This document shows positions 6,767 to 26,925 of a DNA stretch of 38,194 bases, one piece after another (the stretch's first letter is position 1; each line of letters begins with the position of its first letter). The position numbers and the translations under genes are program-made. Below the pieces are notes generated by a model that was not told where the DNA came from, ran no database searches, and saw nothing but the letters and a program-made list of their open reading frames with translations. This stretch comes from Perkinsus chesapeaki ATCC PRA-425 (taxonomy: Eukaryota; Protista; Perkinsozoa). The stretch is from the NCBI GenBank assembly GCA_013115145.1, contig JAAPAO010000339.1, positions 1 through 38,194 on the forward strand. The letters run 5' to 3'.

Positions 6767-7067
6767 GGATATCTTAGCCTTCTCAGACTCCCATTGATTG
6801 TTCTCTAATTAACTGTCGGTCGTTGATGATGAGTGGTGTCGTCGACCAACACTAAAGTAGTCGTCATCACCGAGTGAGTGCTGCTGTTTTCGATTTTCCT
6901 TAATTATCACAACTCGTTGAGTTCATCAGTCAACCGCCCAGCACATCATGCTTCAGTGGAGTTTTCCGAACAAGTGGCGTTTTTCTTGCAATTTTCGTGC
7001 AATTTTTCGCTCTTACTGTCGTCGGCGTCATCCTTGTTACCGTGTTCGATTTAAGTCCGATTTTTCC

Positions 7068-8111: not shown

Positions 8112-8442
8112 GTCGTGGAGAATAACATTATCATTTAACACTGACGTTTGGTACTCCCTCCCTCCCCACTGCTCCATCAGATGCCTGTTGTTGCTATTGC
8201 CGATGTAGTCGGTGCAATCAAAGTTTCCTATTCTCCCCAATGGCTTTGGCATTCTAGTGGGAAAGTTAATCACGGACCATTGGTTTGGAAGGAGGAAATG
8301 GGCGTATCTTAGGTCCATGCACGGTTGATGCCGCCAATGTCATTTCTGTGAGGCGGTCCTTTCTTTTGCATTTCTCTTATATCCTTTATCAATTTATATC
8401 CTGTTTGTCCTCCTCGATAAGCACTCAGTTGTCGGTTAATGG

Positions 8443-11400
8443 ATGCGTTGGCTGTTCGGCGGCAATAGAAGGGACGATGAGGACTGGGAGGATCTCATGG
8501 AGAGCTCGACAACGCTGATGTCGGCCACAGTAGATCCGCAAGGTAGTCCTGGGAAGCTGGATTGGCGGCATCCGGCGAAGGCTTAGGCGAAGGTCCCATC
8601 AGCTTGAAATCTCCGAAGGATACCCGCACACGCGTACTGGTGTACGGGTCACCTTTCGCTGAGATGATGGCTGATAAGGCTGCTGCCGAGGACAGACACG
8701 AGGCTACTTCTATAGGCGGACATAGGTTGAGTGTATCTAGGGGCTCCTTTGGGTTGAGAGGAGGGTCCCCATTGGAAACTACATCACAGCAGGCAGCAGT
8801 AAGCAAGGGCGTCCCACGCCGGGCTTCCACTCCTTGGTAGGCTGCTCGATGGCCGCCGCCGCCGCCAGTCAGGGATGTGGTGGTATCAGCTCCGGTAGTG
8901 CTGGCTGGAGGGGTTCTCAGCAGCTGCAGGATCGATAAGGTGGCAGAGGGGGCTCGGGCAGTGCTATCATGGATAGGTCTCTGTGGGGGACGGTGGGCAT
9001 GTCCTGCTGCTGTGCTCTCAAGGACGTTTGTACGCGTTTGGCCGGAACGATCATGGCCAATGTGGAGTCGGACATTTCCGAGAAGTGGTCCACGAGGCAG
9101 GTTCGTAGAGGACTTCGTGGCACATGCCTCCGCGGTAGGTAACCCCGGTCCGTCTGCCTGGGGAGTACTCAGTGTCTACTATGGCCACTGGAGCCTTCCA
9201 CAGTGTGTGTTTGGGGGCCAAGGGCGGCGGGGGCGGCGGCCAGGTGGGATGTTGGCCATCATCGGCCGAGTTAAGGATACCCGCAGCTAGGTCTATGTCT
9301 GGGGCCACTCTGACTGCTTGGCTCTTAGCAGTTCTGAGTGGAAGGAGGCCGCCGCTGGTGAGGCTGGACGCTATGCATGCAGCAGCAGCCTTCTTCCTGT
9401 CTAGGTCGCAGTAAAGGCCATATCAGTGTCCCAACCAGCCTGGCAGCTTTGGGGGGCTCCTCAGTAGTGGGGGCCATTGCAGCTTGCGAAAGGACCAGCT
9501 ATGCTCTTGTTATACGGAAAGTGATGACAGCTATGGACTACCAGTCAGCAACAACTTTTCTCACAGATGGTATCATCCGCGTTGATGACCGGCTGCAGGC
9601 CAAGGGACTTTAAATGGGCCACGGTGAAGTCAGCACTAGTGGAGCAGATGCCTGCTGATGGTGTCTCATTGGCGGTCCGGCTGGTTCATCGGGGACAACT
9701 GTTGTGTCGGGAGGAGGTCGGAATATCCATCGGTAGTGCGGTATGCTGGATGGGTGTGCAGGGTCCACAGTGTGTCAGAGGTGTCTGGGGGAACTGGTGG
9801 ACTGGAGCTGTCTGGTCGATACTTCCACAACGGGGAGTTCGCCGAGAGCCGGCCTGTGTTCATGCGGAGAATGGCTCACTCGGCAGGGCATGAGCCGGCC
9901 TGGATCTACTTCAAGGACGGTGGTGGAGAGAGGAGGCAATGGGTACGGTACAGCGGGGGCCGACACCTCTGATGATATTATAGGTCATTTCGACAGCGGC
10001 ACCAGGAACTGAAGCTGGCTTCTTCTTGGTCCTGAGCGGACAGCCGTTGAGCAGTCCGCTGGAGCTGTGTAAGAAAGAAGGGGCGCCGACAGTAGCCAGT
10101 GTCGGGCTTGCTCTGGTCGGGGACAGTATTTATCTGCGGCGAGATGACAGTGAAAGCCATGGTCTGGATGGTCGATATGACCGGATGGACGGGTTGATCG
10201 ATGGCACCGTGGGGTATGCTCTATCAGGCGGCAGCGGGCCAGGGACAGTGCTGGTGCCGAATATGGCCAAGGGGAGATGGGAAATTCGCCGTGGGGCTAC
10301 CATGGCTGCATTCAGCACAGATGCCTTCAACTGTGCTCTGCCGTGGTGCATGTCCCAGAGTATCGGCCTGTGGTATCGGTCCAGTGGTGGAGTCTTCCGG
10401 GTGGAAGCGGTAGTGGACGGTGTTGTATCTTCTGATGGTTTGGTGGGAGAGGATACTAGTGATGGTTTGGCTATCGAGCTGGAGGGTATGGTGAGATGCT
10501 GTTTGCTCTTGCATTGGGGTCTGTCGGCTTTGGGCCAACTACTTCCCGTGCCGAAGTTGCTTCATGAGTTCCCCAGCGATACTGAAATCGTCGATATCGC
10601 CGCTGGTGGGCATTTTGGTCTTGCCGCGGATCGAACCGGCGCCGTTTACGGTTGGGGGGATGGGACCTATGGGGAGTTACTGTCATCCAAGGGTGCCGCG
10701 GTGAGGAGGTTGGACGCTCTTGTCGGGTTCAAGGCCAGACAGGTCTCCTGTGGGGCTCGGCATGCCCTGGTTGTAGATGAACAGGGTAGTGTGGTGGCCT
10801 TTGGGGACAACACAGCTGGTCAGTGTGGCTTGGGCAGTAGGGAGGGGCATAGAGTCAAGAGAGCCAAGGTGATTCCTGTGGGCGGGGCGTGCCTCCACGG
10901 TGGAGGTACTGCGGCCTGTGGTGGACGGCATAGTGCTCTGGTGACGGCAGAGGGAAGGCTGTTCACTTGGGGCCATGGTGGGGACGGCAAACTGATACAT
11001 GTCAAGGAGAAGTATGGCCCTAGGTCGGGTATGGAGGAGGAGGAGAGGGTCGAAGGGGGTGACTGGGAGGAGCAGGAGGAGGAGGGAGGCAATAGGCGGC
11101 CTGCTGGGGTGGCCATCAGAAGTGGCCTCAAGGCTGCGGTGCATCGGCCACGGATGGTCTACGCATTGACACATTTGAAGGTAGTAAGGGGCGGCTGTCA
11201 GGGCCAATGGTCCTGGGTGTAGGTACAGGCCGTGGGGCTTGGCGCGGACTCCACAGTGGTGGTAGTGGGGGACAGTACTGCTCTTGAAGGTGTCGTTGGC
11301 TCTGTTGATGGCAGCACGCCGGGGAGCGCGAGCCCCTTGTCGGTATCGAGGAGCAGCAATCCCTTCCGCTCTCGGTTATTTGCTAGTGAGACCGTTGGAT

Positions 11401-13237
11401 TGGCTCGGTGAGATCAGTTTCAGGTTTCGGAGGTTTCGGCAGCTCGCCAGCTCTGGTGCGAGAAGACTCTGCCGACCAGAGCCTACCGTTGCGGCGTCGG
11501 CTGAGCGATGGCAGCGGGTGAGCCGGGTGCCATCGGGGCGGCGCTGTAGGCCGCCGGTTCTACCAGGTCGATCGATGAGTCCATCGGTGCGGACAGCTTC
11601 GTCAGCGCCAAGGAGTCATTGTAGAGCTTCCATGAGGACTCAACTGGTGACTTGTTTAAAAAAGGTATTTTTGGCATGTGAAATTAAAGAAAGTTTCTCA
11701 CTTGGTATCTTGAGGTTGAGCGCGAGTTTCTCACTTGGTATCTTGAGGTTGAGCGCGAGTTTCTCACTTGGTATCTTGAGGTTGAGCGCGAGTTTCTCAT
11801 ACACAGCTGTTTTTAATAGATGTCTCTGCAATGGCGTAGGCCCTCAGAGAAGTCGTTGGTGTCCGATCGGCATAGATGGGGGAAGAGCAGATCCCCAGTC
11901 AGGAGGCCTCGGTCGCCAGGAGCAGGCTCGAGGCCGGGCGATTCAGCGATGGAACTGAGTATTGAAGGAGTGGGCAGATCTAGAATGTCATCGACCCGTC
12001 TGGAGACTGTGCCGGGCCGCTCAGCATACAGGCCACGACCGAGGAGGAGGAAACGTAATTGTGTGGACAAGGGGACTGGGTCGACGGGGCCGCCTGATGA
12101 GGGAAGTAGCGGAGAAGTCTGTATGGAGCTCTGTGCTGAGGGCTTCGGGCCTGGAGTGGCGGCCAGCAGCATAGATGAGTTCTTGGAGGAGGTGCACCAG
12201 CTGAGGCTTATGAACGAGGGCCTTCTGAGGCAGTATGATCAACGGTACAGAGAGCAGCGGGCTGAGGGAGCCATAGGTGTATTGAGGAGGAGGGGCTTGG
12301 ATGGCCCTAGCTACAGCGAAAGTACCGTGCCGGGCAGCGCGAGTCTGGACGCCAGCCCGAGGACGTGGACGAGCGACGTTACCGCTGCAGTCGGAACGCC
12401 TCGGACGCCTCGGTTGGTGTCGGAGGGTCGGAGCCCTAGAGTGGCCAGCAGCCAGTCGGTGAGCGACTGGACTCCGAGGGATGCGGGCTCGATGAGAGTG
12501 GTGAAGATTTCACGGAGGAGAGAGCCTACTGGTCATCAAGAAGAAGCGAGGCATGCGAAGGTAGGTGCTTTGGACTTGCTGCATTGTCATCCGGCCCGTT
12601 ATAGGCAATCAGTGTGCTACCCTCGTCGGCACCGGAGGAGTGGGGCCCAGAGCTGTCCTACTTGCGCCAATGGGTTGTTCGAGAGTAAGGGAGAGGGCTG
12701 CTGGTAGATGACGTCTAAAAGGTACGGATGTGTCGATGAGGCAGTGATGTCGCTGAATGGTCACGCCCATGATGCAGAGAGGGGGCTCCTCTTCTTCGAG
12801 TTTTGGCGGTGGCTGGAGCTCAGGCAGCGACGAGGCGGCGCGCGGCGGCCATGGCCGTTCGACAGAGAGCTCACCGAGGCTATGTTTGATGGGTTGGCGG
12901 GCTCCAGAGGTCCATGGGCGGCTCGAGCCTATGGGGAATCTTTCCTCATAGGTCGGATTTCAGCAGCTGCTCTGTTGGAGGGGACATGCCCCCAAAAGTC
13001 CATGGACGCCAGTGTGAATACGGAGGGGCCAAAGAAGCTTTGGAAGATCCTAAAGAAGGAAGGGACCTGTCAAAAGGGTCGTGTAAAGAGGGAAGGAAAT
13101 CGGTCCAAAGAGGAGGTAGCACGCGTGCACTGCCATAGACGATCTCTCCCCAGGTGGCACCCTCCGTCATGCCATGTCTCGAAGATGACATTATCAGCCT
13201 CGTTGAGCGGTATGGTGCCATGACTGATGTACACTAG
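8443..13237 (+). CDS. Large multi-exon RCC1-repeat protein with C-terminal coiled-coil and low-complexity regions
   Basis: RCC1 repeats include GHVLLLCSQGRLYAFGRNDHGQCGVG, IAAGGHFGLAADRTGAVYGWGDGTYGEL, VSCGARHALVVDEQGSVVAFGDNTAGQCG and ACGGRHSALVTAEGRLFTWGHGGDGKL. A coiled coil lies near 12170-12270. Joining the 12708-13237 exons to this gene is inferred from splice sites. Confidence 0.7.
11692..11799. repeat. 33-bp tandem repeat, 3 identical copies plus 9 bp, inside an intron
   Basis: Unit AGTTTCTCACTTGGTATCTTGAGGTTGAGCGCG repeated head-to-tail with no spacers. Confidence 0.95.
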
Positions 13238-13343: not shown

Positions 13344-15331
13344 ATGTCATCATTTGCTTTACCGTCGTACATAGCTTCGGCCGTGCCTCCCTGGCATTCC
13401 TTTTCCTGGCCAGCCTGGCTCACCACTTGGCCGTCGCTGGGGAGTCTGCCGATACTTCATCGAATTCATCTTCCTCATGTTTTGACCAGTGCTCGTCGCA
13501 GCACTCTAATTGGCATCGGCGGCGTGACGCTTCTCTGCGGGTCGGCCTTCTGGTACCTGCGGAAGCGTCGGCAGGCGTTTTGGCGGAATGCAAGCATGTT
13601 CGTATCACGGAGCGATATGACGCGGGACGAGATCGAGCGGGCGTGTCGGATGATGGCTCTGCCGCAGCTCTCGAAGCGGCCCCTGCATAAAAAGTAGGCT
13701 TCGATCGGCTTCTCCCAGTAGTAGCACAGCAGCAGTGTGGAAGCAGTTGGTACCTGCCCGTAGCGAGGGCGTAGTGCCAGGGGACTGGCTTGACTGGCAA
13801 AATTGAGTGATGATCGGAGGGTATGAGATAGTAGTCATTTTACATTGGTGATGATAGGAACGATGCTTTTCTGCATGCTTTCTGTTCATATGGATTCTAC
13901 CATATAAAGGCATGGGGGTGCAATGGGGCTTTTCATAATAATGCATTCGCGCAACTTCACGCTTTAGCTCTTATTAAGAAGCCTTCTGGAGATCGTCTCC
14001 GATGTCGCCCTGTTCGGTTTGCTTTGCGATGGACTAGTTGGTCCTGCAAATGAAGCTGCAAGTTAGGGGCTTCACCGATATCGCCTACCTTGAGCGTTTC
14101 GTTACTTTTCAGATCGTTCCTTGTGGTGGGCTGCGGTGGCCTGGCCAATACCTGTGCTACCTACATAGCGGCATGTCTTCTGCCTGGCTGTCGCATCACT
14201 CTCATCGATGATGACAAAGTGGAGGCCTCCAACCTCCAGCGACAACACCAGCTTCATTCGGTCAAGGACGTGGGCCACAAGAAGGCAGAGTCGGCCCGAG
14301 TGGCTTGTCGCCGCGTTGCCATGAAGGGTGTTGCGGTGGAGTCGGCGCCGGGCATGCTCACCAAGACCAACGTTCGAGACCTTGTGGGGAAGCATGACGT
14401 CATTCTGGACTGCACTGACTGCCCAGCAACCAGATGGCTCTTGTCCTCGGCCTGCGCGACAGCTCGACGCCCTTTGGTTTCGGGCGCTGCTATGCAGTGG
14501 TCCGGCCAGGTCACGGTGTATTGCAGCGGGGAGGACGGTCCCTGTATGCGCTGTGTTTTTCCCGAGCCACCGCCGACTGAGGCTGGCTGTCGAGGCGGCT
14601 GCGATGTCATGGGAGTGTTCCCTCCTTTGCCCGGCATGATCGGTTGTGTGATGGCCTCCGAGGCTCTCAAGCTCGCGCTAATGGACGGACCTCAGCTGGA
14701 GGAGGCCAGCCTCTCGGGAAAGCTGTTGCTCGTGGACATGCTCGACGGTGGCCTGTCGACGAGAACTGTGGCATTAAAGCGTCGCCCGGACTGCCCTGTG
14801 TGCGGGTGGACTGAGGAGGCGGCGGCCCAAGATCGAAGCGATGCGAGCAGCCTTCGAGAGGATGCTGATGCAGTTCAAGCTCCAACTGTTAATAGTATCG
14901 GCCCCAAGCAGGTAGGTCGAGTGGTGCTCTCGTGGTGGTGGTGGTATGGATGGCTTCAGTTGCGTCATCTGATGCTCGAAAGCCCATCTGCGGCGTGTCT
15001 GGTGATAGACGTTCGCCCGAAGCCTCAGTTTGATATGGTTCATCTGAGGGGGAGCGTTAATGTCCCTTATGAGGACTCCCAGGCGTTCATCGACACAGTG
15101 AAGTCCCTACTAGAGGAGCGACGGCCGAACACCACGGTGGTTTGTTGCCGGAAAGGTGGGCATTTTGCCCGACCTTGACTGAGAGCAGTGTGATTCTTGT
15201 TAGGTAACGACAGCCGGCTTGCCGTCTGCGCTCTGCAAAAGTCGTTTAAGTACCTCCTTAACTTGGACGGTGGCATAATGCAGGCGGCAAAGGAGCTGGG
15301 CGTCGAGGGCAAGCAACTGTTCGTTCCCTAA
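13344..15331 (+). CDS. MOCS3: UBA4/MOCS3-type adenylyltransferase-sulfurtransferase (ThiF/MoeB E1-like domain plus rhodanese) with N-terminal extension
   Basis: MTRDEIERACRM resembles the YSRQ helix. Also present: VVGCGGL, DDDKVEASNLQRQ, DCTD, Zn motifs CMRC and CPVC, GVFPPLPGMIGCVMASEALK, rhodanese IDVRPKPQFDMVHLRGSVNVP, and the spliced active-site loop CCRKG|NDS. Confidence 0.85.
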
Positions 15332-15740
15332 GGCCCGCCGCCGTGTGCCTTGTCTGTAGTTTCGGTTCAGTGACAGTAGTTTGTGATGTACAATACCCTA
15401 ATCGCAGCAGCCATCATTAGTTTCTATTAATAACACTGGTAGCTTGTTCAAGGTTAATGGGTTCGTGGGTGTCATGGCTTCTGCACGCGTGCGCACGAGC
15501 GAATCTTTATAGTGCGAAAGATTCATCTTCCCAGCCCGGCCTGTCTTCAGCTGTTAGTGTGTCACTGATTAAAAGCTGGTCTATGTGCTAATTAATACAC
15601 CTTTTCATACTCGTATTGGGGGGATGCCGGCTGACGTACTCGTTACGAGGGCCATCGAGCTGCAACTCCTGGGCGAGCAGCTAGTCGCTCACTCCACTGT
15701 ACTATAGTTCTGGTGTTTGTCATTTTTGGGGGGCTCTGAT

Positions 15741-18700
15741 ATGGCCTATAATGAGCGGGCCAACGACGCACTTACGGACGCGATCGAAAGGTCACAGCAG
15801 AAGAACTGCCACAGCCAAGGCCGGTAAAGATATTTTAGAGGTTGACTGGTAACCAAGGCCTTCCGGCAGATACCTGTCATTTGAGATACAGAATGCCAGC
15901 ACCCGTAATGTGTCGGATGATGACTTGGTGGAATACTGCAATATGTGGTATAATAAGGAGAGGGATAAGTTCGAAGACGGCTGGCGTCCTGAGATAGGCA
16001 CACCAACTGATACCGGAGGTGGGTTATTGCTTCTAGTTGTTCAACGAAGGCTTAAGCTTGTTAATATTTATTACTGTTGCTCTCTGAACTTTACGTCATG
16101 GCGGTATTATGTTGATATTACCTTGTTATTGTAGATGATATCACATGGCAGCTCCCTGCAGTATTCTATTTGCTTTGACCGTAATCGCAGTAGATGCCTT
16201 TAGATTGTGTACACTGATGTAGCACAGGGCGCCCGAATCCTAGTCTATGCCCCTGCGCACCATATTCAACCTTGGAAAACTCTTTTTATCCTTACCAAGG
16301 AGGTGGCATTAATACGACTCTGAGCACAAAAGATACGGTACTATCGGTAATGATGCCCACTGTCAACAGGTCACGGTGGCTGGCAGCCCGATCGATCTGG
16401 AATAATGCTGCTTAGTGGCTACAACAGCGGAGCGTATGGTGTGAAGATTCAAGGCAGGGTCGAGAGCGTTCGGGCGATGGGGGTCATTGGAGCCGGCTTT
16501 GCCCTTCAGATTCCTACCCAGGTAGCCCGCTGTTCTCGGCTACTCGTTGTCAATGTTATTTAGGTTGCCATGGTGTGCCCAGCGGCGAGTATGTGGTGGG
16601 ACTGGTTGGAGAAGCTAGGAATAGTAGCAGGCTTGGTGGGCGGCGCGGTGGGATGGTGTGACTTAGATTAGGGATCGACCACCGGCTACTAGAGTGAAGA
16701 GGGAGCCTGTCGAGAAGGGGAAGAACTCTAAGTAGGCACCAGCGCTGAGCACGGCTTTCATTTTGCTGTTGTTGTTGTATATGCGTTGTCTTACGGTTTG
16801 ATGATATACAGTAGTGTGCGTCAAATTGGTATCAACTAGAGGCGCTTTTATTTCAAACTTCGAGTATCAGATATATCAATCCTTATGGTCTCAGGAGGTT
16901 GTGTACAGTTGTGATCGATTGGCGCATGCATCACATTCAGCAGCGACCTATCCGCACTCGTACGGATAAGGGGCAAGCTGTGAATGTCGAATGCTGCTGT
17001 GTCTAGAATGTCGGCACGCCGGCACGGTCTCAGTGAAATTTAGCACCATTGCCAGCTTCTCGATTCTTGCTGTATCTTCGTCATTACCGTCCATCACAAA
17101 GTACCACGTATCGGTTGCAACAACGAAGAGGCAGTCGAGTGTCACTGACCAACGGTCTGTGCTGACCAACCTGGATTCTAAGGTACCGAGGATATTATCA
17201 AGACGACACTGCCAAGACTTCCATAGCAGTCAAGAACTACACACAGGCCATGTGGACGGAGCGATGCCGAGCGCAGGTGATGCGAGTGGCTGAGGGGTTA
17301 ATGGATTGGTTTGCAGGTGGAGTTTGCCCGGAAGGATATGGAGGTTCGAAGGCCAGACTGGACGGATGTTGAGGGAAGTGAAGCCCAACTGCGGTGAGTG
17401 GATTGACTTGTCGCTGCAAGTTTTGTTGAAGGCGTTTCATCCGTACGTGGAACTCAATTGAGATATTTCCATAAAGAAATATATAATTCCTTTCGATAGT
17501 CGGGAAGGATGTAATAAAGCCTCGCACACGTCAGTCTACCCATCGGTTCAGCTTTTAGCAGGACGGCGAAGGTATTCGGCTGTCGGGTCAGGTACGAGAA
17601 GATGTTTGAGAAGGTTAGGCAGTCGTATCGGGGCGAGGCATACATCCGTGCGGAGTTGGACTTTGGTGTCAACCTAACAACCGGGAATATGATATGGTAC
17701 GGGAAGGATGGGCAGATGGGATTCACTTCACTGCTTAGGTACTGCACTCAGATTTGGCCGGATGCTGTGCTGGACCGTCTTGGCACTAGATGGCGTCCAA
17801 GATTCTGCGCCGTGGCTCGGCGAAACTATCATGACTCTCGATATCAAGGGGATAAAGGAGGAGTATATATTGCTGATGAGACGTATAGGGCAGTGGCGTG
17901 TAAGGGAAGGACTGGAGAGGGGCTGCTGCCGTATCGGAGTAGATAGACTGGTTATCCTAGGCCAGCTCTGATCCAACCGAGGGCATGGGGTAGAGTATGT
18001 CGATCGTAGAATTCGATTTGTGTGCTTTTTGTTCATTTATCCGGCAAACTTTCAATACTGATAGAAAGTTTCAATATCCGCTAAATATTAAAATTAAGTA
18101 TGGAGTTGTTTCGTTATGGGTTATTTCCTATCATAAAGCTATCAAGGTAAAAGCTGCTAAGGGTTTCAAGGGATGCTGGGACCTTCGAGCTTCACAGAAG
18201 TCTGCTCTTCGGGGGAGCTGAAAATTATCCAAATTAGAAATTTTAATGAGAACTATTTTCTGGTGAAAAAGCATCGAGTTGCATTGCCTCCAGGAGCATT
18301 TGGTATTCCTCTACGCCTCCCCGGATGGGTGGTACAGTTATTTAAGGTATCGGATCTCCTGCGCTGTGTCGGGCAGTGATGCCTATCCTGGCGGCGATGG
18401 CAGCTGGCATACCCAATGCGAGGATGGTGGCTCAGAATGCCCCTCAGTTTGATATATTTTGGGAGTATGTCGGATGGAATAAAAATATGCCTCCACCAGA
18501 GGCCCCATCAGGTAGGGTTGGAAATCCTTTTGTCATCTGATGGCGGTGGACAGGCAAGCCCGGTGGCAGTGGAGTGTGGCGGAACTCTCAGGCATATGAT
18601 GCTGACAATAACAGCGATGACACCTTCATGGCTCAACTGTAGGAGAGGGGGAACAGTGGCTGATAGAGAATGGTAGGTTCAAGCAAGAAAATGACGCTTT

Positions 18701-20192
18701 GCTGGAGCTGCAGTGGTATAACGCTGGAGAGTATCACAGGACCAATGGCATGTGGTGTGGAGGAGAATGCATCCCAGGGGTATCATGGAGTAGGGATGAC
18801 TTTGTTGATAATCTAATGTTATGGTGGAGTGATGCTATTGTTGAGGAGGTATGGGGATTATATAATAGAAGGGATATTCATAATGTTGTTCAGGTTGGTA
18901 AGTTCCGTTATCGCCCTAACTTTATGGACAAAGGAGGCCTGGTATTGGACATAGGTGGTGCATGGACCTCGGTGCAATCTAAGGAAGTTTGGGCGCAGGT
19001 GAGTCCATCAAATGCCCTCAGTGTAGGCATTACTCTGTCAGGCAATGATGTGCATGCTTAGCACTATTATGGCCGGCATTCCCTCCGAGATCGCCGCCTT
19101 GCTGCCATCCAGCGATCCTTTCTGGGACTTCATCGTGGACAAGGAGGGGCCGGAGGTGGTCAGGGCCCAACGAGCGTAGGTTGCTGGTTGCCATTGCTCT
19201 TATAAGGACTGAGGCTCAGGAAGATCAGGGCAGCCCGCAATAGGAGGTTTGGTGTGTCCTGGCAAGAACAGCGGTTTACAAAGCTCCACGGGAACCGTAG
19301 TATGTTTAGGCCGGCGGTAGGTGGGGAGTTTGTAGCGCTTGGAATTACACTGTGCAGTTGCCGACATGGGAAGGGACGTCGGAGTCGAGCCGGCCTCGAC
19401 CGGAAGCTAGTGAGGTGGGGAGGCAGGCCAGGGAGGAGACGGAGACTAGGACATGGAGATCGGAGAAGGTGGAGAAGGATGATAAAAAAGCAAAGCCAAG
19501 TAATGGAGAACGGCGGCGCTGTACTAGTACTGTAACTGTGAAGATGTTGCTGTGGAGTAGTGGGATCTCTTAAGGCACTGCTTTAGGTGGGACGGTATAG
19601 ACAATAGAATACTATATTTATGAAGCGCATATTAGTACGATAACCCTGCTGAATCCTATTATTCTTATAGTCAGTGCTTGCGGCCTACAGGGCCTATTGT
19701 ACACCCTCCAGGAGGGGCCCTCCTGCCTTGAGGTATACTACTATTACTACTGCGATAGAACTTGCAGTTCAGTGTGGTATCACTAGAGTGGATTATGATC
19801 GGGCGTAATGATGTCTTAGCCTTCAGAGCCTTCCTCCTCAAGACCACCGCGCCCATCAGGATCGGGCTTCAGCGGCGGCCTGCCCAGCAACTGCCCTCAG
19901 GCTGCCGCAGTACCGGCGAACGAGGGCCGAGATGTCCGGCAGTTCAGTGGAATGGTCATCGCTGTTTTGGACTACTTGCACAACGAACGTGATGTCGCCT
20001 GCATGAGGAGGGGCGAGAAATTTTACTGCCAGTAAGTTGAACTCGTACTCGCGCCGTATTGAGGAGGGTGACTGCTCCTTCAGACAAGAGACGCAGAATC
20101 TGTTCCTCGGCCGAAAGGAGGGTTCCGAGGCTTGCCTGTGGCTCCCTAAGTTCGTGGTTACTGGTGACCTCGGGGGCCTGAGGGGTGGATAG
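15741..20192 (+). CDS. Tandem-array paralogue 1: three internal repeats, SH3-like domain, C-terminal LRGG
   Basis: Hand-spliced, with exons collinear to copies 2 and 3. Starts MAYNERANDALTDAI and ends WLPKFVVTGDLGGLRGG* (TAG 20190-20192). Confidence 0.8.
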
Positions 20193-20321
20193 ATAAATTG
20201 ACTTGCTTGTTCCTATCACTGCCGGTGTACCTGTTTTTTCATTTGCATTGTTCTGCTTTTGTTATCAGAAGGGGAGGCTCAGTGATGGGGTGGTGGTTAC
20301 GCTCGTGTTTGGTTTTCTTTA

Positions 20322-23285
20322 ATGGCATACAACGCAAAGGCGAACGAAGTATTGGAGCATGCGTTGAAGACAGCACATGAGAAGCATGCCTCTAGTCTGG
20401 GCAGGTAGCCATGATAGGGAGAGCGACATCATTATACTACTTGTTGGATAGTACCATAGAATGACTGATTAGGCCGTAAACCCTGTTGACTCTGGATTAC
20501 GGTATAGTACTGATACCCAAAATGATACCCAGCTCGGGCGCACACTACCTCGTGGCCAGAATTTTCAGGCCGACATCCACTCTCTTGCTGCTTAGGTATC
20601 TCTCGTTCGATATTCAAAATGCGGGAGTGCGCAAGGTGACGTTGGAGGAGCTGTTGACGTATTGCAATAGGTGGTACAGTAAGGACATCGATAAGTTCGA
20701 GGACGCTTGGAAGCCGGAGATCGGTCCTAGAAATGACACAGGTGATGTCTTGAGCTTCTTTCTGACACCTCTAGCTGTTCAGGAAGGGGATGGCAGCCGG
20801 ACAGGTCTGGAATACAGTTGTTGAGCGGCCATTATTGCGGCGCTTGGGGTGTTAAAATCCAGGGCAAGATGGAGAGCGTTCGAGCCATGGCGGTGATCGG
20901 AGCAGGGTTCGCTCTGAACATCCCGGCCGAGGTGAGGGCTCGCTGCTGGCCGGGGAGGCGCAGGTGGGGGTCAGATCGCTATGGTGTGCCCGGCAGCAGC
21001 GGAATGGTGGGACTGGCTGGAGAAGCTTGGGCTGGTAGGGTTGGCGTGCTGGTGGGAGGGAGGCTTCGTGTAGGTGAGGGATCGGCCACCGGCTACTAGA
21101 GTGGTCCAGGAGATGGAGGAGAAGGGCGGCAGGACGAAGTAGGAGGCCAAGGAGGGGGGACTAGAGGCTTTCATTGGCTTCGCTGGGCAGGTATAAAGCG
21201 AAGTACGACGATAAGGAGGCGAAGACGTCACGGGCAGTGAAGAACTATATGGACCCAATGCGATCAGATAGGAACGCTCAAATGGTGGGGCAGGCGGCAG
21301 ACGGCGGGGCGGCTAGGTATAGTCCTTCCTGCTGTCAGGTTGAACTGGCCCGCCGAAATCTGGAGGTATGCAGGCCGAGCTGGCCCCATGTGGAGGGGGA
21401 GGAGGCGATGACGAAGTAGGGTGGGCTCTTGAGGGAAGGCAGCACCGGCGGTATCGCATGACAGGTATCGTAGTATGCATGCGAGGATAAGACAGTCTTA
21501 CCGAGGAGAGGACTACATCCGGGCACCGATGGACCATGGACTTACTGTGACTAGTGGGAATGTTATATGGCAAGCATCGTTTCGGTGGATGTTAGTTACC
21601 TTTAATGAAGGTACTGTATGCAGATTTGGCCAGATGCGGTGCTCGATAAGTTGGGCACGAGGTGGCGGCCGAGGTTTAGCGCAGTGGCGAGGGGGAAGAC
21701 ACATGATTACGGAGTGCAGGGGGAGAAAGGTGGCGTGTATGTCGCTGATGAGCTCCACAATGCTGTGGCATGTAGACTAGGGACGATTTTGGTGGGCGGG
21801 ATGGGTTCTGTTAGGCATCGGCTCTCCTATATTGTGCCGGGCTGTGATGCCGATACTGGCGGCGATGGCCGCGGGGATACCTGACGCGAAGATGGTGGCC
21901 AATTGCGCTCCTGAGTTTGATATATTTTGGGAGTATGTTGGATGGAATAAACACATGCCTCCACCAGAGGCCCCTCCAGGTAGCCCAAGGAAGGATTCTT
22001 TGGCAGGTGATGGTGGCATTGGGTAGGTAAGCCGGACGGCACGGGCAAGTGGCGGAATTCGGCAGCTTACGATGCCGAGAACAATGAGGACGACACTTTC
22101 ATGGCCACCCTGTACCCTCATTCGCGGCCTGGTGTGCGCCAGTGGGATCGATCAGATTTATGCAGGAGAATGACGCCCTACTGGAGCAGCTGTGGTGCAG
22201 TGTGGGGGAGTATAACAGGACGGCTGGCTACTGGACCGGAGGCAACTGCAACCCTGGAGTCTCATGGAGCCGAGATGATTTCGTTGACAATCTTATGTTG
22301 TGGTGGCCGTTTGCCTTTATCGAGGAGGTGCCGTAATTGTGGAGCGCTGTATTTCTTTGCCTTTGGACAGGTCGGCCGGTTCCGATATCGCCCAGAGTTC
22401 ATGGACAAGGGTGGCCTCAGTCTGGACGTGGGCGGCTACTACACCTGTGTGCAGACCAAGGAGGCCTGGGCTAGGGTACCATTCGCATGGCTCCCTGTGG
22501 GGTACTGTCGAATCAGGCAATGATGTGTATGTTGAGCTCTATCATCTGCGGTATACCTGCCGAGATAGCTGCATTGCTGCCGGCCTGTGACCCTTTCTGG
22601 GACCTAGTCATCGATACGAAGGGGCCAGAGGCAGTGAGAGCTCAACGAGAGTGAGCCAGGAGGAGGAGGAGGAGATGGTGAATAGTGGTGCTTCAGGAAT
22701 ATCCGAGATGCTCGAGATAGAAGGTTTGGTGAAGCCTGGCAGAGGCAACGCTTTTATAAGATTTACGGCAGCACCTCAGAATTCAGGCCATCAGTAGGTC
22801 GGACTGCTGGTTGTACTGTAACAGATGGTTGCTAGTTGCCGAGGCCTCGTAGGGGTGGTGATAGCAGCGGTGTCCGGTCTGGTAGTGAGTGGCATAAGAA
22901 GGATGAGAAAAGCAAGCCTAAAGGAGTATCTGATAAAAGTATAACTTGAGCTGTGGCTATCGTGAACCTCAATCGTGTTAGAGCCACCGAAGGTCGCCCA
23001 GAGCAGTAGCAGTGGTAGCCAGCAGGCTGATGACGTCCGGATCTACACCGAGGTTGTGTTCGCCGCTATGGACTACTTCCACAATCAGTCAGATGTAGCT
23101 CAGATGAAGAAGGGCGACAAGTTTTACTGCCAGTAGAATCCCTGCTATATCCACTTTACCACTTTTCTATCGAAAGATACGAGACGTCAGACCTGTACCT
23201 CGGCACGAAGGCTGGTGAGAGCCGTCAGCTTTGGTTGCCCAAGTTCGTCGTGACCGGCAATGTCTGTGGCGTCCGGGGCGGCTAG
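20322..23285 (+). CDS. Tandem-array paralogue 2: three internal repeats, SH3-like domain, C-terminal VRGG
   Basis: Starts MAYNAKANEVLEHAL, shares intron positions with copies 1 and 3, and ends WLPKFVVTGNVCGVRGG* (TAG 23283-23285). Confidence 0.8.
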
Positions 23286-23488
23286 CTAGTTGATCTAAAT
23301 TGGGTGAGCATGCTTGGCAGCTGTGTTTCTCGACCGCTGGTGATCTGCGTCTCGCGGGGCGCATCTTCGGCACGGTGGTGATTCATTTTTTGTGTCAGTG
23401 GTTGCACAATGAGCACGTTCATGCAAGTCTTTGTCGCGCGCCACGAAACTCTTCCGTTCAGTTTTTCTATCGACTTGTTGTTGTCGTG

Positions 23489-26400
23489 ATGTCTTACAGT
23501 GAGAAGGCTAACAGCGCTCTCCTCGACGCTCTGGATAAGGCCAGAAGGAACGCTGAGAACAGCCAAGGAAAGTAGGCCATTTGACTCGGCAAATGTGAAA
23601 ATGATTGTTACCGTTAGTATACGGTCAATATAATATTTCTAGATGACACGTACTGTATGCATCATTGACATATTTTTATTAGTATAGAGTCTCTTCTGAT
23701 TAGATTGTTTATAATTTGTCGCATCCGCCACTGCCTGGTTCTCTTATACCTGCGGCGCTGCTGTCCTGTGGTCCTGATGACATTGCATAGCCTTCCTGTT
23801 CAACTTCACTGCAGTCTCTGTACAGGTACCTCTCATTTGAGATTCAAGGGGCTGCCAGACGTAAAGTGGATGAGAGTGACCTAGTGGCTTACTGCAATGT
23901 ATGGTATAAGATCGAGAGGGACAAGTTCGAGGAGGGCTGGCGTCCCGAGATCGGCAAGACGACCGAATGCGGTGTGTTGTGGGTGCCGGCTTGGGCCCTT
24001 TTTGTAGCGTCCCTCAGGTCGTGGATGGCAGACGGACAGGACCGGTATCTTCCTTCTGAGCAGCCACAGCACAGGGGCGTGGGGCCTCAAGGTGCAAGGC
24101 CGGGTCGAGAGCGTCCGGGCAATGGGCGTGATTGGTGCTGGTTACGCCTTGGGCATCTCTCCTAATGTAAGCTCCGTGGTGTTATCGAACTTGACAACTG
24201 CTCTAGGCTGCGATGGTATGCCCGGCCGCCAGCGATTGGTGGGACTGGCTGGAAGAGCTCAATCTGGTGCGCGGACGATCCCTCCTTTGGGCGTCACGTT
24301 TCCGCAGGTCCGAGATCGTCCGCCAGCTACTATGGTCAAGAGACAGCCCGATGAGAAGGGGAAGAGGGCCAAGTGGGCAGCAGCCGCAACTGTTCCTCCC
24401 ATCTCCGCCCATGGTCGGTACAGGTATCGCTCATACACCCAGGACTCGACAGCGAAGACCTCGGTAGCTGTGAGGCAGTATAAGAATATTATGTGGACCG
24501 ACAAGTGCCGTCAGCATGTAGGTGTGGTGGAGGGGGCAGCGGAGCCTTGGATGGTGTGTTGTAGGTTGACGCTGCCAGGAGGGACATAGAGACCTGTCCA
24601 CCACAGTGGAAGAGGATGGAAGGCCAAGCTGCCCAGAAGAAGTAGGCCTGTCGATTCTGTGGGGGGTTTTAGTGTTGTTAGGTATGAACAGATGTTCCAG
24701 ATGGTGCAGGGTTCGTATCAAGGTGGTGACTACATCCGAGCTGAGCTGGATTATGGACTTAAGATCACCACAGGCAACCTGATATGGTAATAACACATGT
24801 CTCCGCTCATCAACTGCCATTGCATACATTTAAGTGAGACCATATCGTTCTCCGCTCATGTCGGTATAGCTTGATAGTACTCACTCCAAGGACTCAGCTA
24901 TCACTCCGTGGAAGCTCAGACTTACTTGTTTTATTATTATCAGACTCGCTCAGCTCAGCCGGTCTCAGAGGGACTGTTTCGCTTATGTCTGGTGTAACGG
25001 CTTTCCTTATGAATGTGCCGCTTTTCTCAGGTACTGCCAGCAGATTTGGCCAGATTGCGTTCTAGATAAGCTTGGCACCAGATGGCGACCTCGGACCAGT
25101 ACTGTGGCCTGGAAGACTAAGCAGAAAGATTCACGCTACTCTGGAGACAAGGGAGGGGTCTATCTGCCCGACGACACCCATAAGGCCGTCGCTTGTGGGG
25201 AGATCATAGCCCAAGTCAGACGGACGGTCCCCGTTAGGTATCGGCACACCGGCTATGTGTCGGGCAGTGATGCCTATCCTGGCGGCAATTGCAGCGGGCA
25301 TTCCAGACGCTAAGATGGTGGCTCAGAATGCCCCTCAGTTCGATATTTTTTGGGAGTATGTCGGATGGAATAAAAATATGCCTCCACCGGAAGTCCCCAG
25401 CGGTAAGCCTCTATTTTTTTCACGCCGCATGAGCTACTGCTGCTTTATAGAGAAGCCCAGCGGCTGTGGGGCTTGGAGGCGCAGTAGGGCCTATGATGAG
25501 GAGAACGTCGATGACGATGACTTCATGGCCAGACTGTAGGCCGGGCGGGGTGGCTGAGGGCGATGGGCTGGGCAGGTTTAAGAGGGAGAATGACGCTATG
25601 CTGGAGCTGCAATGGTATAATGTGGGGGAGTATAACAGGACTAACGGTCAATGGTGTGGAGGGGAATGCATCCCAGGGGTATCATGGAGTAGGGATGACT
25701 TTGTTGATAATCTAATGTTATGGTGGAGTGATGCTATTGTTGAGGAGGTATGGGGATTATGTAATAGAAGGGATATTCATAATGTTGTTCAGGTTGGAAG
25801 ATTCCGTTATCGCCCTAACTTTATGGACAAAGGAGGGCTGGTATTGGATATAGGTGGTGCCTACACTTCTCTGCAGAGCAAGGAGGCATGGGCTCAGGTA
25901 AGCGTCTCCTTCAACTCCAAAGCTAACTGCTTCTTCTTCTCGACTAGGCGATGATGTGCATGCTTGGCTCCATTATGGCCGGCATACCTGCTGAGATCGC
26001 CGCGCTTATCCCCGCCAGCGATCCTTTCTGGGACTACATATGCGATAAAGAGGGCCCGGAGGTTGTCAGGATCCAGCGATCGTAGGGCCGCTGCCGCCAA
26101 CAAGAGGAGACGGTCTGTTGTGTCAGAAAAATCAGAGCTGCTCGAGATGCACGTTTTGGGGCTGACTGGCAGACTGAGAGGTTCAAGAGGGAGAGCAAAG
26201 GCAGCGGCGGTAGCGCCTTCCAGCCACGGGTAGGTCCAGGGGGCAGTGGTGGTGGTTACTGATGCTTAGGTAGCGAGTGGCGCAAGCTCCAGCCACCAGA
26301 GGGATGAGGAAAATTCTCCTATCGAGGAGACCAAGTACGAGAAAGCAAAACCGAGCTCCGCTGACGCTGGCGGTGGGAAGTCTCCTGAGAAGAGTGGGCT

Positions 26401-26759
26401 CGGACCAGGAGTGACGAGCTGTAAGTGTTTTTTCAGAGCCGCCTGCCAGCAGCGCGCCGAAGATCCCCTCGTCTCCGCCGCCCATCCCTCAGAACTACGC
26501 AGAAGTCTGGGAATGCAGCGGCACTGTTGTGGCCAAGCTCAGCTACAGCCACGGTAACCCCGAATACGCTACGATAAAGTGCGGTGAGAAGTTTCACTGC
26601 AAGTGAGGCTCTTGGGAACTGCTGGCGGCGGGTGCAGAGTCGATCAGGTTCGAAGCTCCGATGCTTTATTATGGCACGATTGAGGACGGCCAGGAGGAGC
26701 AATGGCTGCCGAAGTATGTGGTCACCGCCATTCCGCGAGGAGATATTCGTGGCGCGTGA
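23489..26759 (+). CDS. Tandem-array paralogue 3: three internal repeats, SH3-like domain, C-terminal IRGA
   Basis: Starts MSYSEKANSALLDAL and ends WLPKYVVTAIPRGDIRGA* (TGA 26757-26759). Confidence 0.8.
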
Positions 26760-26925
26760 CGTTGGGTGTGGCAATCAAGTCAGTGGCGAGTTACTAGACT
26801 TTTACATGAACGAATTTTAATGAGTGTTACTATCGAACGAATATGATGAACATGGTTTCCATCCGAGGCTCTCTGAGGTGTTGTTATTGTCTGGTTGCAA
26901 AAGAGAGCAGGATTCAGTGTTAAGC

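What the first reader, a model, noticed from the sequence alone, without database searches (positions are those of the whole stretch)
13344..26759. Ubiquitin-like C-terminal tails (LRGG, VRGG, IRGA) on genes directly downstream of an E1-like enzyme
Seen: the three array proteins end GGLRGG*, CGVRGG* and GDIRGA*, 10-11 residues after the SH3-like PK[F/Y]VV. The array starts about 400 bp after the UBA4/MOCS3-like gene on the same strand. Known: ThiF/E1 enzymes adenylate C-terminal glycines; ubiquitin and NEDD8 end in LRGG; bacterial Cap2 E1-E2 enzymes conjugate CD-NTases that lack a Ubl fold through a terminal Gly or Ala. Inference: these large non-Ubl proteins may be activated or conjugated through the tail, mimic free ubiquitin for ZnF-UBP readers, or carry Gly-end C-degrons. 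The adjacency may be coincidental, because UBA4 normally acts on URM1/MOCS2A and eukaryotic neighbours are often unrelated.
Basis: partly seen in the sequence, partly recalled or inferred. Interest (0 to 1): 0.85.

Follow-up and report, generated by a model that had tools for sequence, protein, structure and literature searches.

The report
Conserved RGG tails beside ordinary UBA4
Three neighbouring genes of the oyster and clam parasite Perkinsus encode orphan proteins that end in a ubiquitin-like -RGG/-RGA tail, which is conserved across species, but nothing found here ties that tail to the ordinary UBA4/MOCS3 enzyme gene next door.

Summary
The window is a Perkinsus chesapeaki contig. A ThiF+rhodanese gene (UBA4/MOCS3 type) ends at 15331. 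Then, 409 nt later on the same strand, come three tandem paralogues ending GGLRGG*, CGVRGG* and GDIRGA*.

New here:
- The domain before the tail is a true SH3 fold, not a beta-grasp fold.
- In three orthologue groups across three Perkinsus species, the last three residues are [RK]-G-[GA] in 8 of 9 genes. The exception, P. marinus copy 1, ends LRRE. Residues just upstream vary, and synonymous sites are near saturation. The terminal tripeptide is therefore under selection.
- The E1 neighbour is conserved in all three species, but so is the whole block of more than 25 kb, so this says little.
- The E1 keeps every canonical UBA4/MOCS3 residue and has no E2 module.
- All 25 family members outside Perkinsus lack the tail, and the three whose contigs I looked up have no ThiF gene nearby.

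Verdict: this is a real, conserved free-C-terminus motif on an orphan SH3 protein family. It most likely serves as a docking or turnover signal. Coupling to UBA4 is unsupported (about 5%). No RNA data were available. The scan noted this same array before (s1-225858), on this same DNA.

The parts
13344..15331 (+). UBA4/MOCS3-type E1 gene (ThiF adenylation domain plus rhodanese domain). First exon to 13694, main exon from 14111, short internal introns. The annotated P. marinus start corresponds to 13596; 13344-13595 is a conserved in-frame N-terminal extension with a hydrophobic segment.
   Evidence: Pfam ThiF 1.9e-49 and Rhodanese 3.4e-7. Mapping of the P. marinus protein P0049. Stop at 15329-15331. 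Catalytic and zinc-binding residues invariant in alignment A3. Extension conserved in three species.
15741..20192 (+). Array gene copy 1 (annotated FOL47_006089, 708 aa): orphan N-terminal module of about 560 aa, disordered linker, SH3 domain, tail TGDLGGLRGG.
   Evidence: P0020 maps at 100% identity over most exons. Named. AF2 model.
20322..23285 (+). Array gene copy 2: same architecture, tail TGNVCGVRGG.
   Evidence: Collinear tblastx with copies 1 and 3. P. olseni orthologue P0045 maps to 20322-23282. Ending shown.
23489..26759 (+). Array gene copy 3 (annotated FOL47_006091, 702 aa): same architecture, tail TAIPRGDIRGA.
   Evidence: P0036 maps to 23489-26756. Named. Ending shown.
20160..20192 (+). 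Copy 1 C-terminal tail codons plus stop (ends L-R-G-G).
   Evidence: Residues 705-708 have pLDDT below 50, so the tail is predicted flexible.
23253..23285 (+). Copy 2 C-terminal tail codons plus stop (ends V-R-G-G).
   Evidence: The peptide ending is identical in P. marinus and P. olseni, with synonymous codon differences.
26724..26759 (+). Copy 3 C-terminal tail codons plus stop (ends I-R-G-A).
   Evidence: Orthologues end SRGG (P. olseni) and SRGA (P. marinus).
20032..20083 (+). Last intron of copy 1 (52 nt, GTAAGT...CAG). It splits the SH3 domain, and retaining it would end the protein at ...KFYCQ.
   Evidence: the junction reproduces the annotated protein.
23133..23176 (+). Last intron of copy 2 (44 nt, GTAGAA...AAG), placed by analogy with the P. 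olseni orthologue junction.
26603..26647 (+). Last intron of copy 3 (45 nt, GTGAGG...CAG). The donor overlaps an in-frame TGA.
19937..20159 (+). SH3-fold coding region of copy 1 (residues about 642-699 of P0020), interrupted by the last intron.
   Evidence: AF2 strands 642-694. Foldseek PDB matches to Fyn/Src/Hck SH3 with TM 0.75-0.79 by target. VIA-align Z 8-9.4 over residues 637-699.

Best explanation
The three genes are tandem paralogues of an orphan protein family, named so far only in Perkinsus. Each protein has an N-terminal module of about 560 residues with three alpha/beta repeats and no recognisable fold relative. This is followed by a disordered linker of about 70 residues, a genuine SH3 fold, and a flexible tail of 10-12 residues.

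The last three residues of the tail, [RK]-G-[GA] with a free carboxylate, are held by purifying selection, while the rest of the tail drifts. This part is shown.

The gene upstream is the organism's ordinary UBA4/MOCS3 enzyme. Its known substrates are the beta-grasp sulfur carriers URM1 and MOCS2A (established knowledge). It sits beside the array only as part of a long, co-directional, collinear gene block inherited by all three Perkinsus species. This part is also shown.

Inferred: the tail works as a short linear motif that a trans-acting factor reads as a free -RGG/-RGA carboxy-terminus. Of the known mechanisms, the closest are a Gly-end turnover signal or docking to a reader of ubiquitin-type C-termini. 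It is not a handle for the neighbouring E1.
For: - Organism and gene identity.
- Tails.
- Orthologue tails: copy 1 is LRGG / [VA]KGG / LRRE, copy 2 is VRGG in all three species, copy 3 is IRGA / SRGG / SRGA.
- Codons of the conserved R and G differ synonymously between species. pS in the adjoining SH3 codons is 0.51-0.81 and pN is 0.05-0.33. The sequence has therefore had time to change.
- P. olseni allelic or strain variants differ upstream of the tripeptide (VKGG vs AKGG; TW.. vs TL..) but not in it.
- SH3 fold: Foldseek TM 0.75-0.79 and rmsd 1.4-2 A; VIA Z up to 9.4. The tail has low pLDDT.
- The E1 is canonical. The GxGGxG motif, SNL-RQ motif, two CxxC pairs, the Cys aligned with the MOCS3 catalytic Cys, and the rhodanese Cys are all invariant in A3. 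It is 36% identical to mammalian MOCS3 over 98% of the query. Only ThiF and Rhodanese domains are present.
- The block is collinear from window position about 1.9 kb to 28.5 kb with P. marinus and P. olseni.
- Outside Perkinsus, none of 25 family members ends in G[GA]. Three contigs checked have no ThiF gene within 10 kb.
- Precedents for reading non-ubiquitin -GG ends: the USP16 ZnF-UBP domain binds the histone H4 C-terminus (PMC13493902), and KLHDC-family ligases read Gly-Gly ends (PMC11568203).
Against: - No reader, degron receptor or partner has been identified in Perkinsus, so the mechanistic half is inference only.
- Two of nine tails end in Ala. From general knowledge, Ala fits adenylation chemistry (Cap2 substrates) at least as well as it fits a di-Gly pocket.
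- P. marinus copy 1 has lost GG in both haplotypes, so the motif is dispensable in at least one paralogue.
- The chance that the single UBA4 gene happens to lie next to G[GA]-ending genes is low. My rough estimate from residue frequencies is a few per cent.
- No transcript evidence confirms the last exon and stop.
- Some P. olseni gene models splice out the copy 2 stop and fuse copies 2 and 3.
Confidence: 0.6

Rival explanations
1. The neighbouring UBA4/MOCS3 adenylates (and perhaps thiocarboxylates) the terminal Gly/Ala of the array proteins. They would then be conjugated or act as sulfur carriers, as a eukaryotic analogue of Cap2 acting on CD-NTases.
For: - Same-strand adjacency of 409 nt, conserved in three species.
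- A flexible tail ending in Gly or Ala, conserved in 8 of 9 orthologues.
- Gly/Ala interchange at the last position resembles Cap2 substrates (general knowledge).
Against: - The E1 is fully canonical and has no E2 or other added module.
- No second Perkinsus ThiF+rhodanese protein appeared among the 120 best hits, so this is probably the housekeeping enzyme.
- The body before the tail is SH3, not beta-grasp.
- An Arg at position -3 is ubiquitin/NEDD8-like. The URM1 and MOCS2A ends that I recall (HGG, SGG) are not.
- The whole neighbourhood is syntenic, not just this gene pair.
- P. marinus copy 1 lost GG while its E1 stays intact.
- Homologues elsewhere lack the tail, and the three whose contigs were checked have no E1 neighbour.
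Confidence: 0.05
2. The tail is activated by another enzyme elsewhere in the genome, such as the ubiquitin- or NEDD8-type E1. The SH3 proteins would then be conjugated like a modifier without a beta-grasp fold.
For: The tail ends [LV]-R-G-G, as in ubiquitin and NEDD8 (general knowledge). It is predicted to be flexible and is conserved.
Against: - From general knowledge, canonical E1s depend on contacts with the beta-grasp body, and here the body is SH3.
- Position -4 varies: L, V, A, I or S.
- Two tails end in Ala and one in RE.
- No eukaryotic precedent is known to me.
Confidence: 0.05
3. The tail has a structural or self-contained role and no link to ubiquitin-type machinery. For example, it could pack against the protein's own SH3 or N-terminal module, mediate oligomerisation among the three paralogues, or bind RNA or an acidic partner through Arg-Gly.
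For: - The motif is conserved.
- The SH3 groove residues are only partly canonical: one ALYDY Tyr is kept, the WW Trp is replaced by F/Y, and P-x-[FY] is kept. Unusual ligands are therefore possible.
- Three co-located paralogues could act together.
Against: AF2 gives no confident docking of the tail, with pLDDT below 50 for the last residues. Distant homologues keep the invariant residues of the N-terminal module without having the tail.
Confidence: 0.15
4. The ending has no function. It is an ancestral accident kept by short divergence times or by gene conversion among the tandem copies.
For: - All nine genes descend from one ancestor.
- Only three species are available.
- One orthologue has lost GG without other damage.
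Against: - Synonymous sites beside the tail are near saturation (pS 0.51-0.81).
- The R and G codons themselves differ synonymously.
- Residues immediately upstream vary and even change in number. This argues against both short divergence time and gene conversion.
Confidence: 0.12

Closest known systems
C-terminal tails of ubiquitin, NEDD8 and ISG15 (…LRGG-COOH)
   Same: A flexible tail ending hydrophobic-Arg-Gly-Gly with a free carboxylate. Copies 1 and 2 match LRGG and VRGG.
   Different: - The folded body is SH3 rather than beta-grasp.
- The protein has about 700 residues.
- There is no precursor extension.
- Two orthologues end in Ala and one in RE.
- No conjugation has been shown.
UBA4/MOCS3 with URM1 and MOCS2A (eukaryotic sulfur-carrier activation)
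   Same: The neighbouring gene is a bona fide member: ThiF plus rhodanese with all key residues. This enzyme acts on C-terminal Gly-Gly.
   Different: Its known substrates are beta-grasp proteins of about 100 residues. The array proteins are unrelated in fold and size. The adjacency is general synteny.
CBASS type II Cap2 (E1-E2 fusion) conjugating CD-NTases through a terminal Gly/Ala
   Same: A non-Ubl protein with a disordered tail ending in Gly or Ala is encoded next to an E1-family gene.
   Different: - Cap2 systems are bacterial operons. They have an E2 module and usually a JAB protease partner.
- Here the E1 has a rhodanese domain and no E2.
- No protease or E2 domain turned up in the flanking ORFs I scanned.
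- This is a eukaryotic nuclear locus.
Gly-end C-degrons read by KLHDC1/2/3/10 cullin-RING ligases
   Same: A terminal Gly-Gly (or R/K-Gly) on an accessible tail is the consensus signal (PMC11568203).
   Different: These receptors are described in animals, and their presence in Perkinsus was not tested. Here the signal would be a conserved feature of full-length proteins, not of aberrant products.
Histone H4 C-terminus (…GFGG) bound by the USP16 ZnF-UBP domain
   Same: This is a non-ubiquitin protein whose free Gly-Gly end is read by a reader of ubiquitin C-termini (PMC13493902).
   Different: That binding is weak and its role is unclear. No Perkinsus ZnF-UBP partner has been examined. An Ala ending in two orthologues may not fit such a pocket.
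SH3 domains
   Same: The five-strand barrel superposes on Fyn/Src/Hck SH3 at 1.4-2 A. An ALYDY-like A-x-[LI]-x-Y motif and a P-K-[FY]-V motif are kept.
   Different: - No Pfam SH3 model matches, even at E up to 10.
- A profile search of PDB sequences gives only E 0.26-1.1.
- The conserved Trp of the binding groove is replaced by F/Y.

Membership tests
Ubiquitin-like modifiers (beta-grasp Ubls) | Beta-grasp fold immediately before the tail | tested here: not met
   The C-terminal domain is an SH3 barrel: Foldseek TM 0.75-0.79 to Fyn/Src SH3 and VIA Z 8-9.4.
Ubiquitin-like modifiers (beta-grasp Ubls) | C-terminal Gly-Gly (or a single Gly) exposed on a flexible tail | tested here: met
   Two of three window genes end in GG and the third in GA. 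Of nine orthologues, six end in GG, two in GA and one in RE. Tail pLDDT is below 50.
Ubiquitin-like modifiers (beta-grasp Ubls) | ATP-dependent activation by an E1 and covalent attachment to targets | not testable with these tools
   This needs biochemistry or proteomics.
UBA4/MOCS3 (the neighbouring gene) | ThiF adenylation domain with nucleotide-binding motifs, two zinc CxxC pairs and the catalytic Cys | tested here: met
   Pfam ThiF 1.9e-49. G39/G41/G42, S72-N73-L74, R76-Q77, C177/C180, C259/C262 and C195 are invariant in A3 alongside mammalian MOCS3.
UBA4/MOCS3 (the neighbouring gene) | C-terminal rhodanese domain with active-site Cys | tested here: met
   Pfam Rhodanese 3.4e-7. C363, G366 and S369 are invariant.
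CBASS Cap2-type E1-E2 system | E2-like domain fused to, or next to, the E1 | tested here: not met
   Only ThiF and Rhodanese are recorded on the E1 in the window and in P. marinus. Flanking ORFs gave RCC1, DSPn or nothing.
CBASS Cap2-type E1-E2 system | Substrate is a non-Ubl protein with a terminal Gly/Ala encoded beside the E1 | tested here: met
   This is a resemblance in layout only.
SH3 domain | Five-stranded SH3 barrel | tested here: met
SH3 domain | Match to curated SH3 sequence models | tested here: not met
   No Pfam family at E up to 10 for five C-terminal segments. The profile against PDB sequences gave best E 0.26 (Fgr) and 1.1 (Jouberin SH3).
Gly-end C-degron substrates | Terminal -GG or -[RK]G recognised by a dedicated ligase, with tail-dependent instability | not testable with these tools
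   The sequence pattern fits in six of nine orthologues. Receptor presence and protein turnover were not examined.

The most novel reading that the evidence does not exclude
A eukaryote uses an SH3-fold protein, not a beta-grasp protein, as a substrate for E1-type C-terminal activation through a conserved -RGG/-RGA tail. The activating enzyme could be the adjacent, possibly membrane-anchored UBA4/MOCS3. The array proteins would then become conjugated or thiocarboxylated. This would be the first eukaryotic counterpart of bacterial Cap2/CD-NTase priming.
Probability: 0.06. Interest if true: 0.9.

Novelty: new variant of a known kind. Interest (0 to 1): 0.42.

Why it matters
Free Gly-Gly carboxy-termini are rare and are specifically read in eukaryotes by E1s, deubiquitinases, ZnF-UBP domains and C-degron ligases. 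A non-ubiquitin protein family that keeps [RK]-G-[GA] at its very end under selection gives a natural test of who reads such ends in alveolates, a group whose ubiquitin-type systems are little studied.

P. marinus grows in culture and can be transfected and edited (PMC8062965, listed; not read), so tail-deletion experiments are feasible. If the E1 link were real, it would extend non-Ubl conjugation from bacterial immunity to eukaryotes.

As it stands, the finding is a well-supported conserved motif with an unproven mechanism. The adjacency to UBA4 is most simply explained by inherited gene order.

Tried and rejected
- **Transcript evidence.** The run search listed only two small runs with the same species label, holding none of the sampled words. 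Laying them on 20800-26800 gave zero reads. The last exon and stop therefore rest on comparative evidence.
- **Sequence families.** Array proteins and distant homologues gave no Pfam match.
- **Fold of the N-terminal module.** It was folded alone (pLDDT 81.7). Foldseek PDB gave best E 0.075 at probability 0.08. AFDB clusters returned only Perkinsus self-hits. VIA-align wide gave best Z 4.6. The ESM Atlas gave TM 0.24 or less by shape and scores of 0.54 or less by features. All of this is noise.
- **Profile search.** A profile search of the 5.8-billion-protein set returned only Perkinsus proteins.
- **Second P. marinus locus.** L004 looked like an independent array without an E1. It is a fragmented second haplotype of the same locus, 92-98% identical and full of N gaps.
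- **Sequencing error for LRRE.** I considered that the P. marinus copy 1 ending LRRE was a sequencing error and rejected this. Both haplotypes carry it, and it differs from GG by two G-to-A changes with the stop in place.
- **Gene conversion.** I considered it as the cause of the shared ending and rejected it, because the residues just upstream differ between copies.
- **Literature.** A search for Perkinsus plus URM1 found no papers. The Perkinsozoa spliced-leader paper did not address co-transcription of neighbouring genes.
- **Not possible here.** I could not search for Perkinsus URM1, MOCS2A, ZnF-UBP or KLHDC-like genes, because no tool gives access to the whole genome or proteome and I did not type query sequences from memory.

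Full report
**Identity of the window.** A protein search with a close homologue returned 'hypothetical protein FOL47_006089 [Perkinsus chesapeaki]' on a contig of 38194 bases, which is the window's length. A second annotated protein, FOL47_006091, lies on the same contig. The window is therefore a nuclear contig of the mollusc parasite Perkinsus chesapeaki (Perkinsozoa, Alveolata). Genes from about 5.3 kb to 31 kb lie on the + strand, with short GT-AG introns and positive GC skew.

**Check of the observation.** Translating all frames finds exactly three endings of the type [LVIM]RG[GA]*. All are on the + strand and all follow PK[FY]VV:
- GGLRGG*, ending at 20192
- CGVRGG*, ending at 23285
- GDIRGA*, ending at 26759

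The three genes are collinear paralogues (tblastx). Copy 1 runs 15741-20192, copy 2 runs 20322-23285, and copy 3 runs 23489-26759.

The upstream ORF scores ThiF 1.9e-49 and Rhodanese 3.4e-7. Its stop is at 15329-15331, 409 nt before the ATG of copy 1.

**Is the stop the real C-terminus?**
- In each copy a 44-52 nt GT-AG intron (20032-20083, 23133-23176, 26603-26647) separates ...KF[YH]C[QK] from the last exon.
- Retaining that intron would truncate the protein in the middle of a domain.
- The last exon supplies the final strands of that domain and is conserved in frame in nine genes from three species.
- No RNA run holding the stretch was listed, and the two small same-species runs gave no reads. 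The C-terminus therefore rests on comparative and structural evidence, not on cDNA.
- Some P. olseni gene models splice out the copy 2 stop and fuse copies 2 and 3 into a 1402-residue product. Other P. olseni models, and the reading frames of the P. marinus and P. chesapeaki genomic DNA, end copy 2 at VRGG. I read the fusion as a prediction artefact but cannot exclude it.

**What the proteins are.**
- The family is tiny. HMMER against 1.84 billion representatives found 19 proteins. Only Perkinsus members carry names, and the rest come from metagenome assemblies.
- No Pfam model matches.
- AlphaFold2 with a 25-sequence alignment gave mean pLDDT 76.7. Residues 1-560 are globular alpha/beta, 572-638 are disordered, and 642-699 form a five-strand barrel. 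The last residues have pLDDT below 50.
- The barrel is an SH3 fold. Foldseek against the PDB gave TM 0.75-0.79 by target and rmsd 1.4-2.0 A over about 55 residues against Fyn, Src, Hck and Lyn SH3 domains. VIA-align gave Z 8-9.4 over residues 637-699. It is not a beta-grasp fold.
- By sequence the SH3 relationship is invisible: Pfam finds nothing even at E up to 10, and the profile against PDB sequences gives E 0.26-1.1.
- The N-terminal module, folded alone (pLDDT 81.7), has no significant match in the PDB, AFDB or the ESM Atlas. It appears to be three repeats of a small alpha/beta unit.

**Conservation of the tail.** This is the key new result.

| Copy | P. chesapeaki | P. olseni | P. marinus |
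|---|---|---|---|
| 1 | TGDLGGLRGG | TGDLRM[VA]KGG | TGDLTTLRRE |
| 2 | TGNVCGVRGG | TGNLCGVRGG | TGNLCGVRGG |
| 3 | TAIPRGDIRGA | T[WL]AQRENRSRGG | AWSQNNRSRGA |

- Position -3 is R or K in 9 of 9 genes. Position -2 is G in 8 of 9. The last residue is G in 6, A in 2 and E in 1.
- Positions -4 to -8 vary freely in copies 1 and 3 and even change in number.
- The codons of the conserved residues differ synonymously. Arg is AGG, CGG, CGT, CGC or AGA, and Gly is GGT, GGA, GGC or GGG.
- The proportion of synonymous differences in the adjoining 24 SH3 codons is 0.51-0.81 between species, against 0.05-0.33 for non-synonymous differences. (The comparisons involving P. olseni copy 3 are shifted by a one-residue indel.)
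- At that divergence, my rough reckoning is that an unconstrained tripeptide would survive in about one pairwise comparison in a hundred. The terminal [RK]-G-[GA] is therefore under purifying selection.
- Gene conversion does not explain the pattern, because the neighbouring tail residues differ between copies.
- The one exception is real. Both P. marinus haplotypes read AGA GAG where P. olseni reads GGA GGG, and the stop is unmoved.
- The tail is a Perkinsus innovation. None of the 25 family members of 550 residues or more from metagenomes ends in G[GA], although several end in an SH3-like strand pattern.

**The E1 gene.**
- The Perkinsus enzyme aligns end to end with mammalian MOCS3 and other eukaryotic UBA4s (36-38% identity).
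- It keeps the nucleotide-binding glycines, the SNL-RQ motif, both CxxC zinc pairs, the Cys aligned with the MOCS3 catalytic Cys, and the rhodanese CxxGxxS loop.
- Among the 120 best hits to it, only one named Perkinsus protein appears (P. marinus 'Molybdenum cofactor synthesis protein, putative'), plus one unnamed near-identical sequence. There is no sign of a second, specialised paralogue, although a weaker one cannot be excluded.
- It carries no E2-like or other extra catalytic domain.
- From established knowledge, UBA4/MOCS3 adenylates and thiocarboxylates the Gly-Gly ends of the beta-grasp proteins URM1 and MOCS2A. As I recall them, those tails lack the Arg at -3 that marks the ubiquitin and NEDD8 type.
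- The array tails therefore look like ubiquitin tails rather than URM1 tails, and they sit on a different fold.

**Synteny.**
- In P. marinus (L001) and P. olseni (L002, L003) the gene order is RCC1-like gene, ThiF+rhodanese gene, copy 1, copy 2, copy 3.
- The whole region from window position about 1.9 kb to 28.5 kb is collinear with both species, so the E1-array pair is no better conserved than any other pair in the block.
- An apparent second P. marinus locus (L004) is a gapped second haplotype, not an independent array.
- Intergenic gaps are short: 409, 129 and 203 nt. All genes point the same way.
- In three contigs carrying distant homologues, the family gene is single-copy and lies next to a Sec63/DnaJ gene in dense, intron-less DNA. 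No ThiF gene lies within 10 kb.

**Interpretation.**

Shown:
- A conserved free-C-terminus tripeptide sits on a flexible tail behind a real SH3 domain.
- A canonical UBA4 lies next door as part of inherited gene order.

Inferred:
- The tail is a short linear motif read in trans. Known readers of such ends include the KLHDC-family ligases, which take Gly-Gly ends as degrons (PMC11568203), and ZnF-UBP domains, which bind ubiquitin's free end and, weakly, the Gly-Gly end of histone H4 (PMC13493902).
- I rank a docking or turnover signal first. A self-contained structural role and no function at all come next.
- I put E1-dependent activation at about 5% for UBA4 and about 5% for another E1.
- The Gly/Ala alternation at the last position is the one feature that fits adenylation chemistry slightly better than a di-Gly pocket. 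I keep it as evidence against my preferred reading.

**Novelty and score.** The combination of an orphan triple-repeat module, an SH3 domain and a selected -RGG end is, as far as these searches show, undescribed: the proteins are annotated only as hypothetical and a Perkinsus-plus-URM1 paper search found nothing. It is a new variant of a known kind, namely proteins with functional Gly-end C-termini. The eye-catching part of the finding, a functional link to the E1, is not supported. I score interest at 0.42. The motif is real and testable in a culturable organism, but its mechanism is open and the E1 story is probably coincidence.

Noticed in passing
window 13344-13595 (+); L001 about 7900-8180; L002 about 7830-8110: The UBA4/MOCS3 reading frame stays open and conserved upstream of the Met used in the P. 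marinus annotation. It holds a conserved upstream Met, a Trp/Pro-rich stretch, and a hydrophobic 19-mer (Kyte-Doolittle 1.55) followed by RKRRQ, in all three species. The enzyme may carry an N-terminal membrane anchor or targeting segment.
   Followed up: partly
window about 1900-28500 vs L001 and L002: The whole block is collinear among P. chesapeaki, P. marinus and P. olseni. Exons are 65-78% identical and introns cannot be aligned. All genes are on one strand, and intergenic gaps in the array are only 129-409 nt. This would be compatible with co-transcription in a lineage that uses spliced-leader trans-splicing.
   Followed up: partly
L003 2524-9498 and 13575-20287 (P. olseni annotation): Public gene models fuse the RCC1-like gene with ThiF+rhodanese (1842 aa) and fuse array copy 2 with copy 3 (1402 aa). 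The second fusion uses a GTACGT that lies inside the V-R codons of the tail. Both are probably prediction artefacts but are untested by RNA.
   Followed up: partly
P0020 residues 1-565 (window 15741 to about 19300, spliced): The N-terminal module folds confidently (pLDDT 81.7) into three similar alpha/beta units. It has no significant structural neighbour in the PDB, AFDB clusters or the ESM Atlas, so it is a candidate new fold. Invariant residues include R279-W280-R281-P282, K469-G470-G471 and F518-W519.
   Followed up: partly
L005, L006, L007, L008, L009: Distant homologues (28-36% identity) occur only in metagenome contigs with dense, apparently intron-less eukaryote-type genes. In the three proteins looked up (five contigs), the gene lies directly upstream of a Sec63/DnaJ gene. 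The organisms are unidentified.
   Followed up: no
window 11692-11799: A perfect 33-nt tandem repeat (3.3 copies) lies inside an open frame downstream of the RCC1-like repeats and encodes the repeated peptide SFSLGILRLSA.
   Followed up: no
window 10026-11222 and 5304-6140 (+): Upstream neighbours are an RCC1-repeat protein (RCC1_2 3.4e-22) and an ORF matching the N-terminal half of dual-specificity phosphatases (DSPn 3.8e-7). Large ORFs at 6948-8111 and 29031-31114 have no Pfam match.
   Followed up: no
window 26733-26741: The copy 3 tail in P. chesapeaki contains an R-G-D triplet (IPRGDIRGA). It is absent from the P. olseni and P. marinus orthologues, so it is probably chance.
   Followed up: yes
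window 16021-16368, 16737-17180, 17908-18340, 19508-19861: Copy 1 has several introns of 350-440 nt at positions where copies 2 and 3 have introns of a few tens of nt. Intron size has diverged strongly within the array.
   Followed up: no
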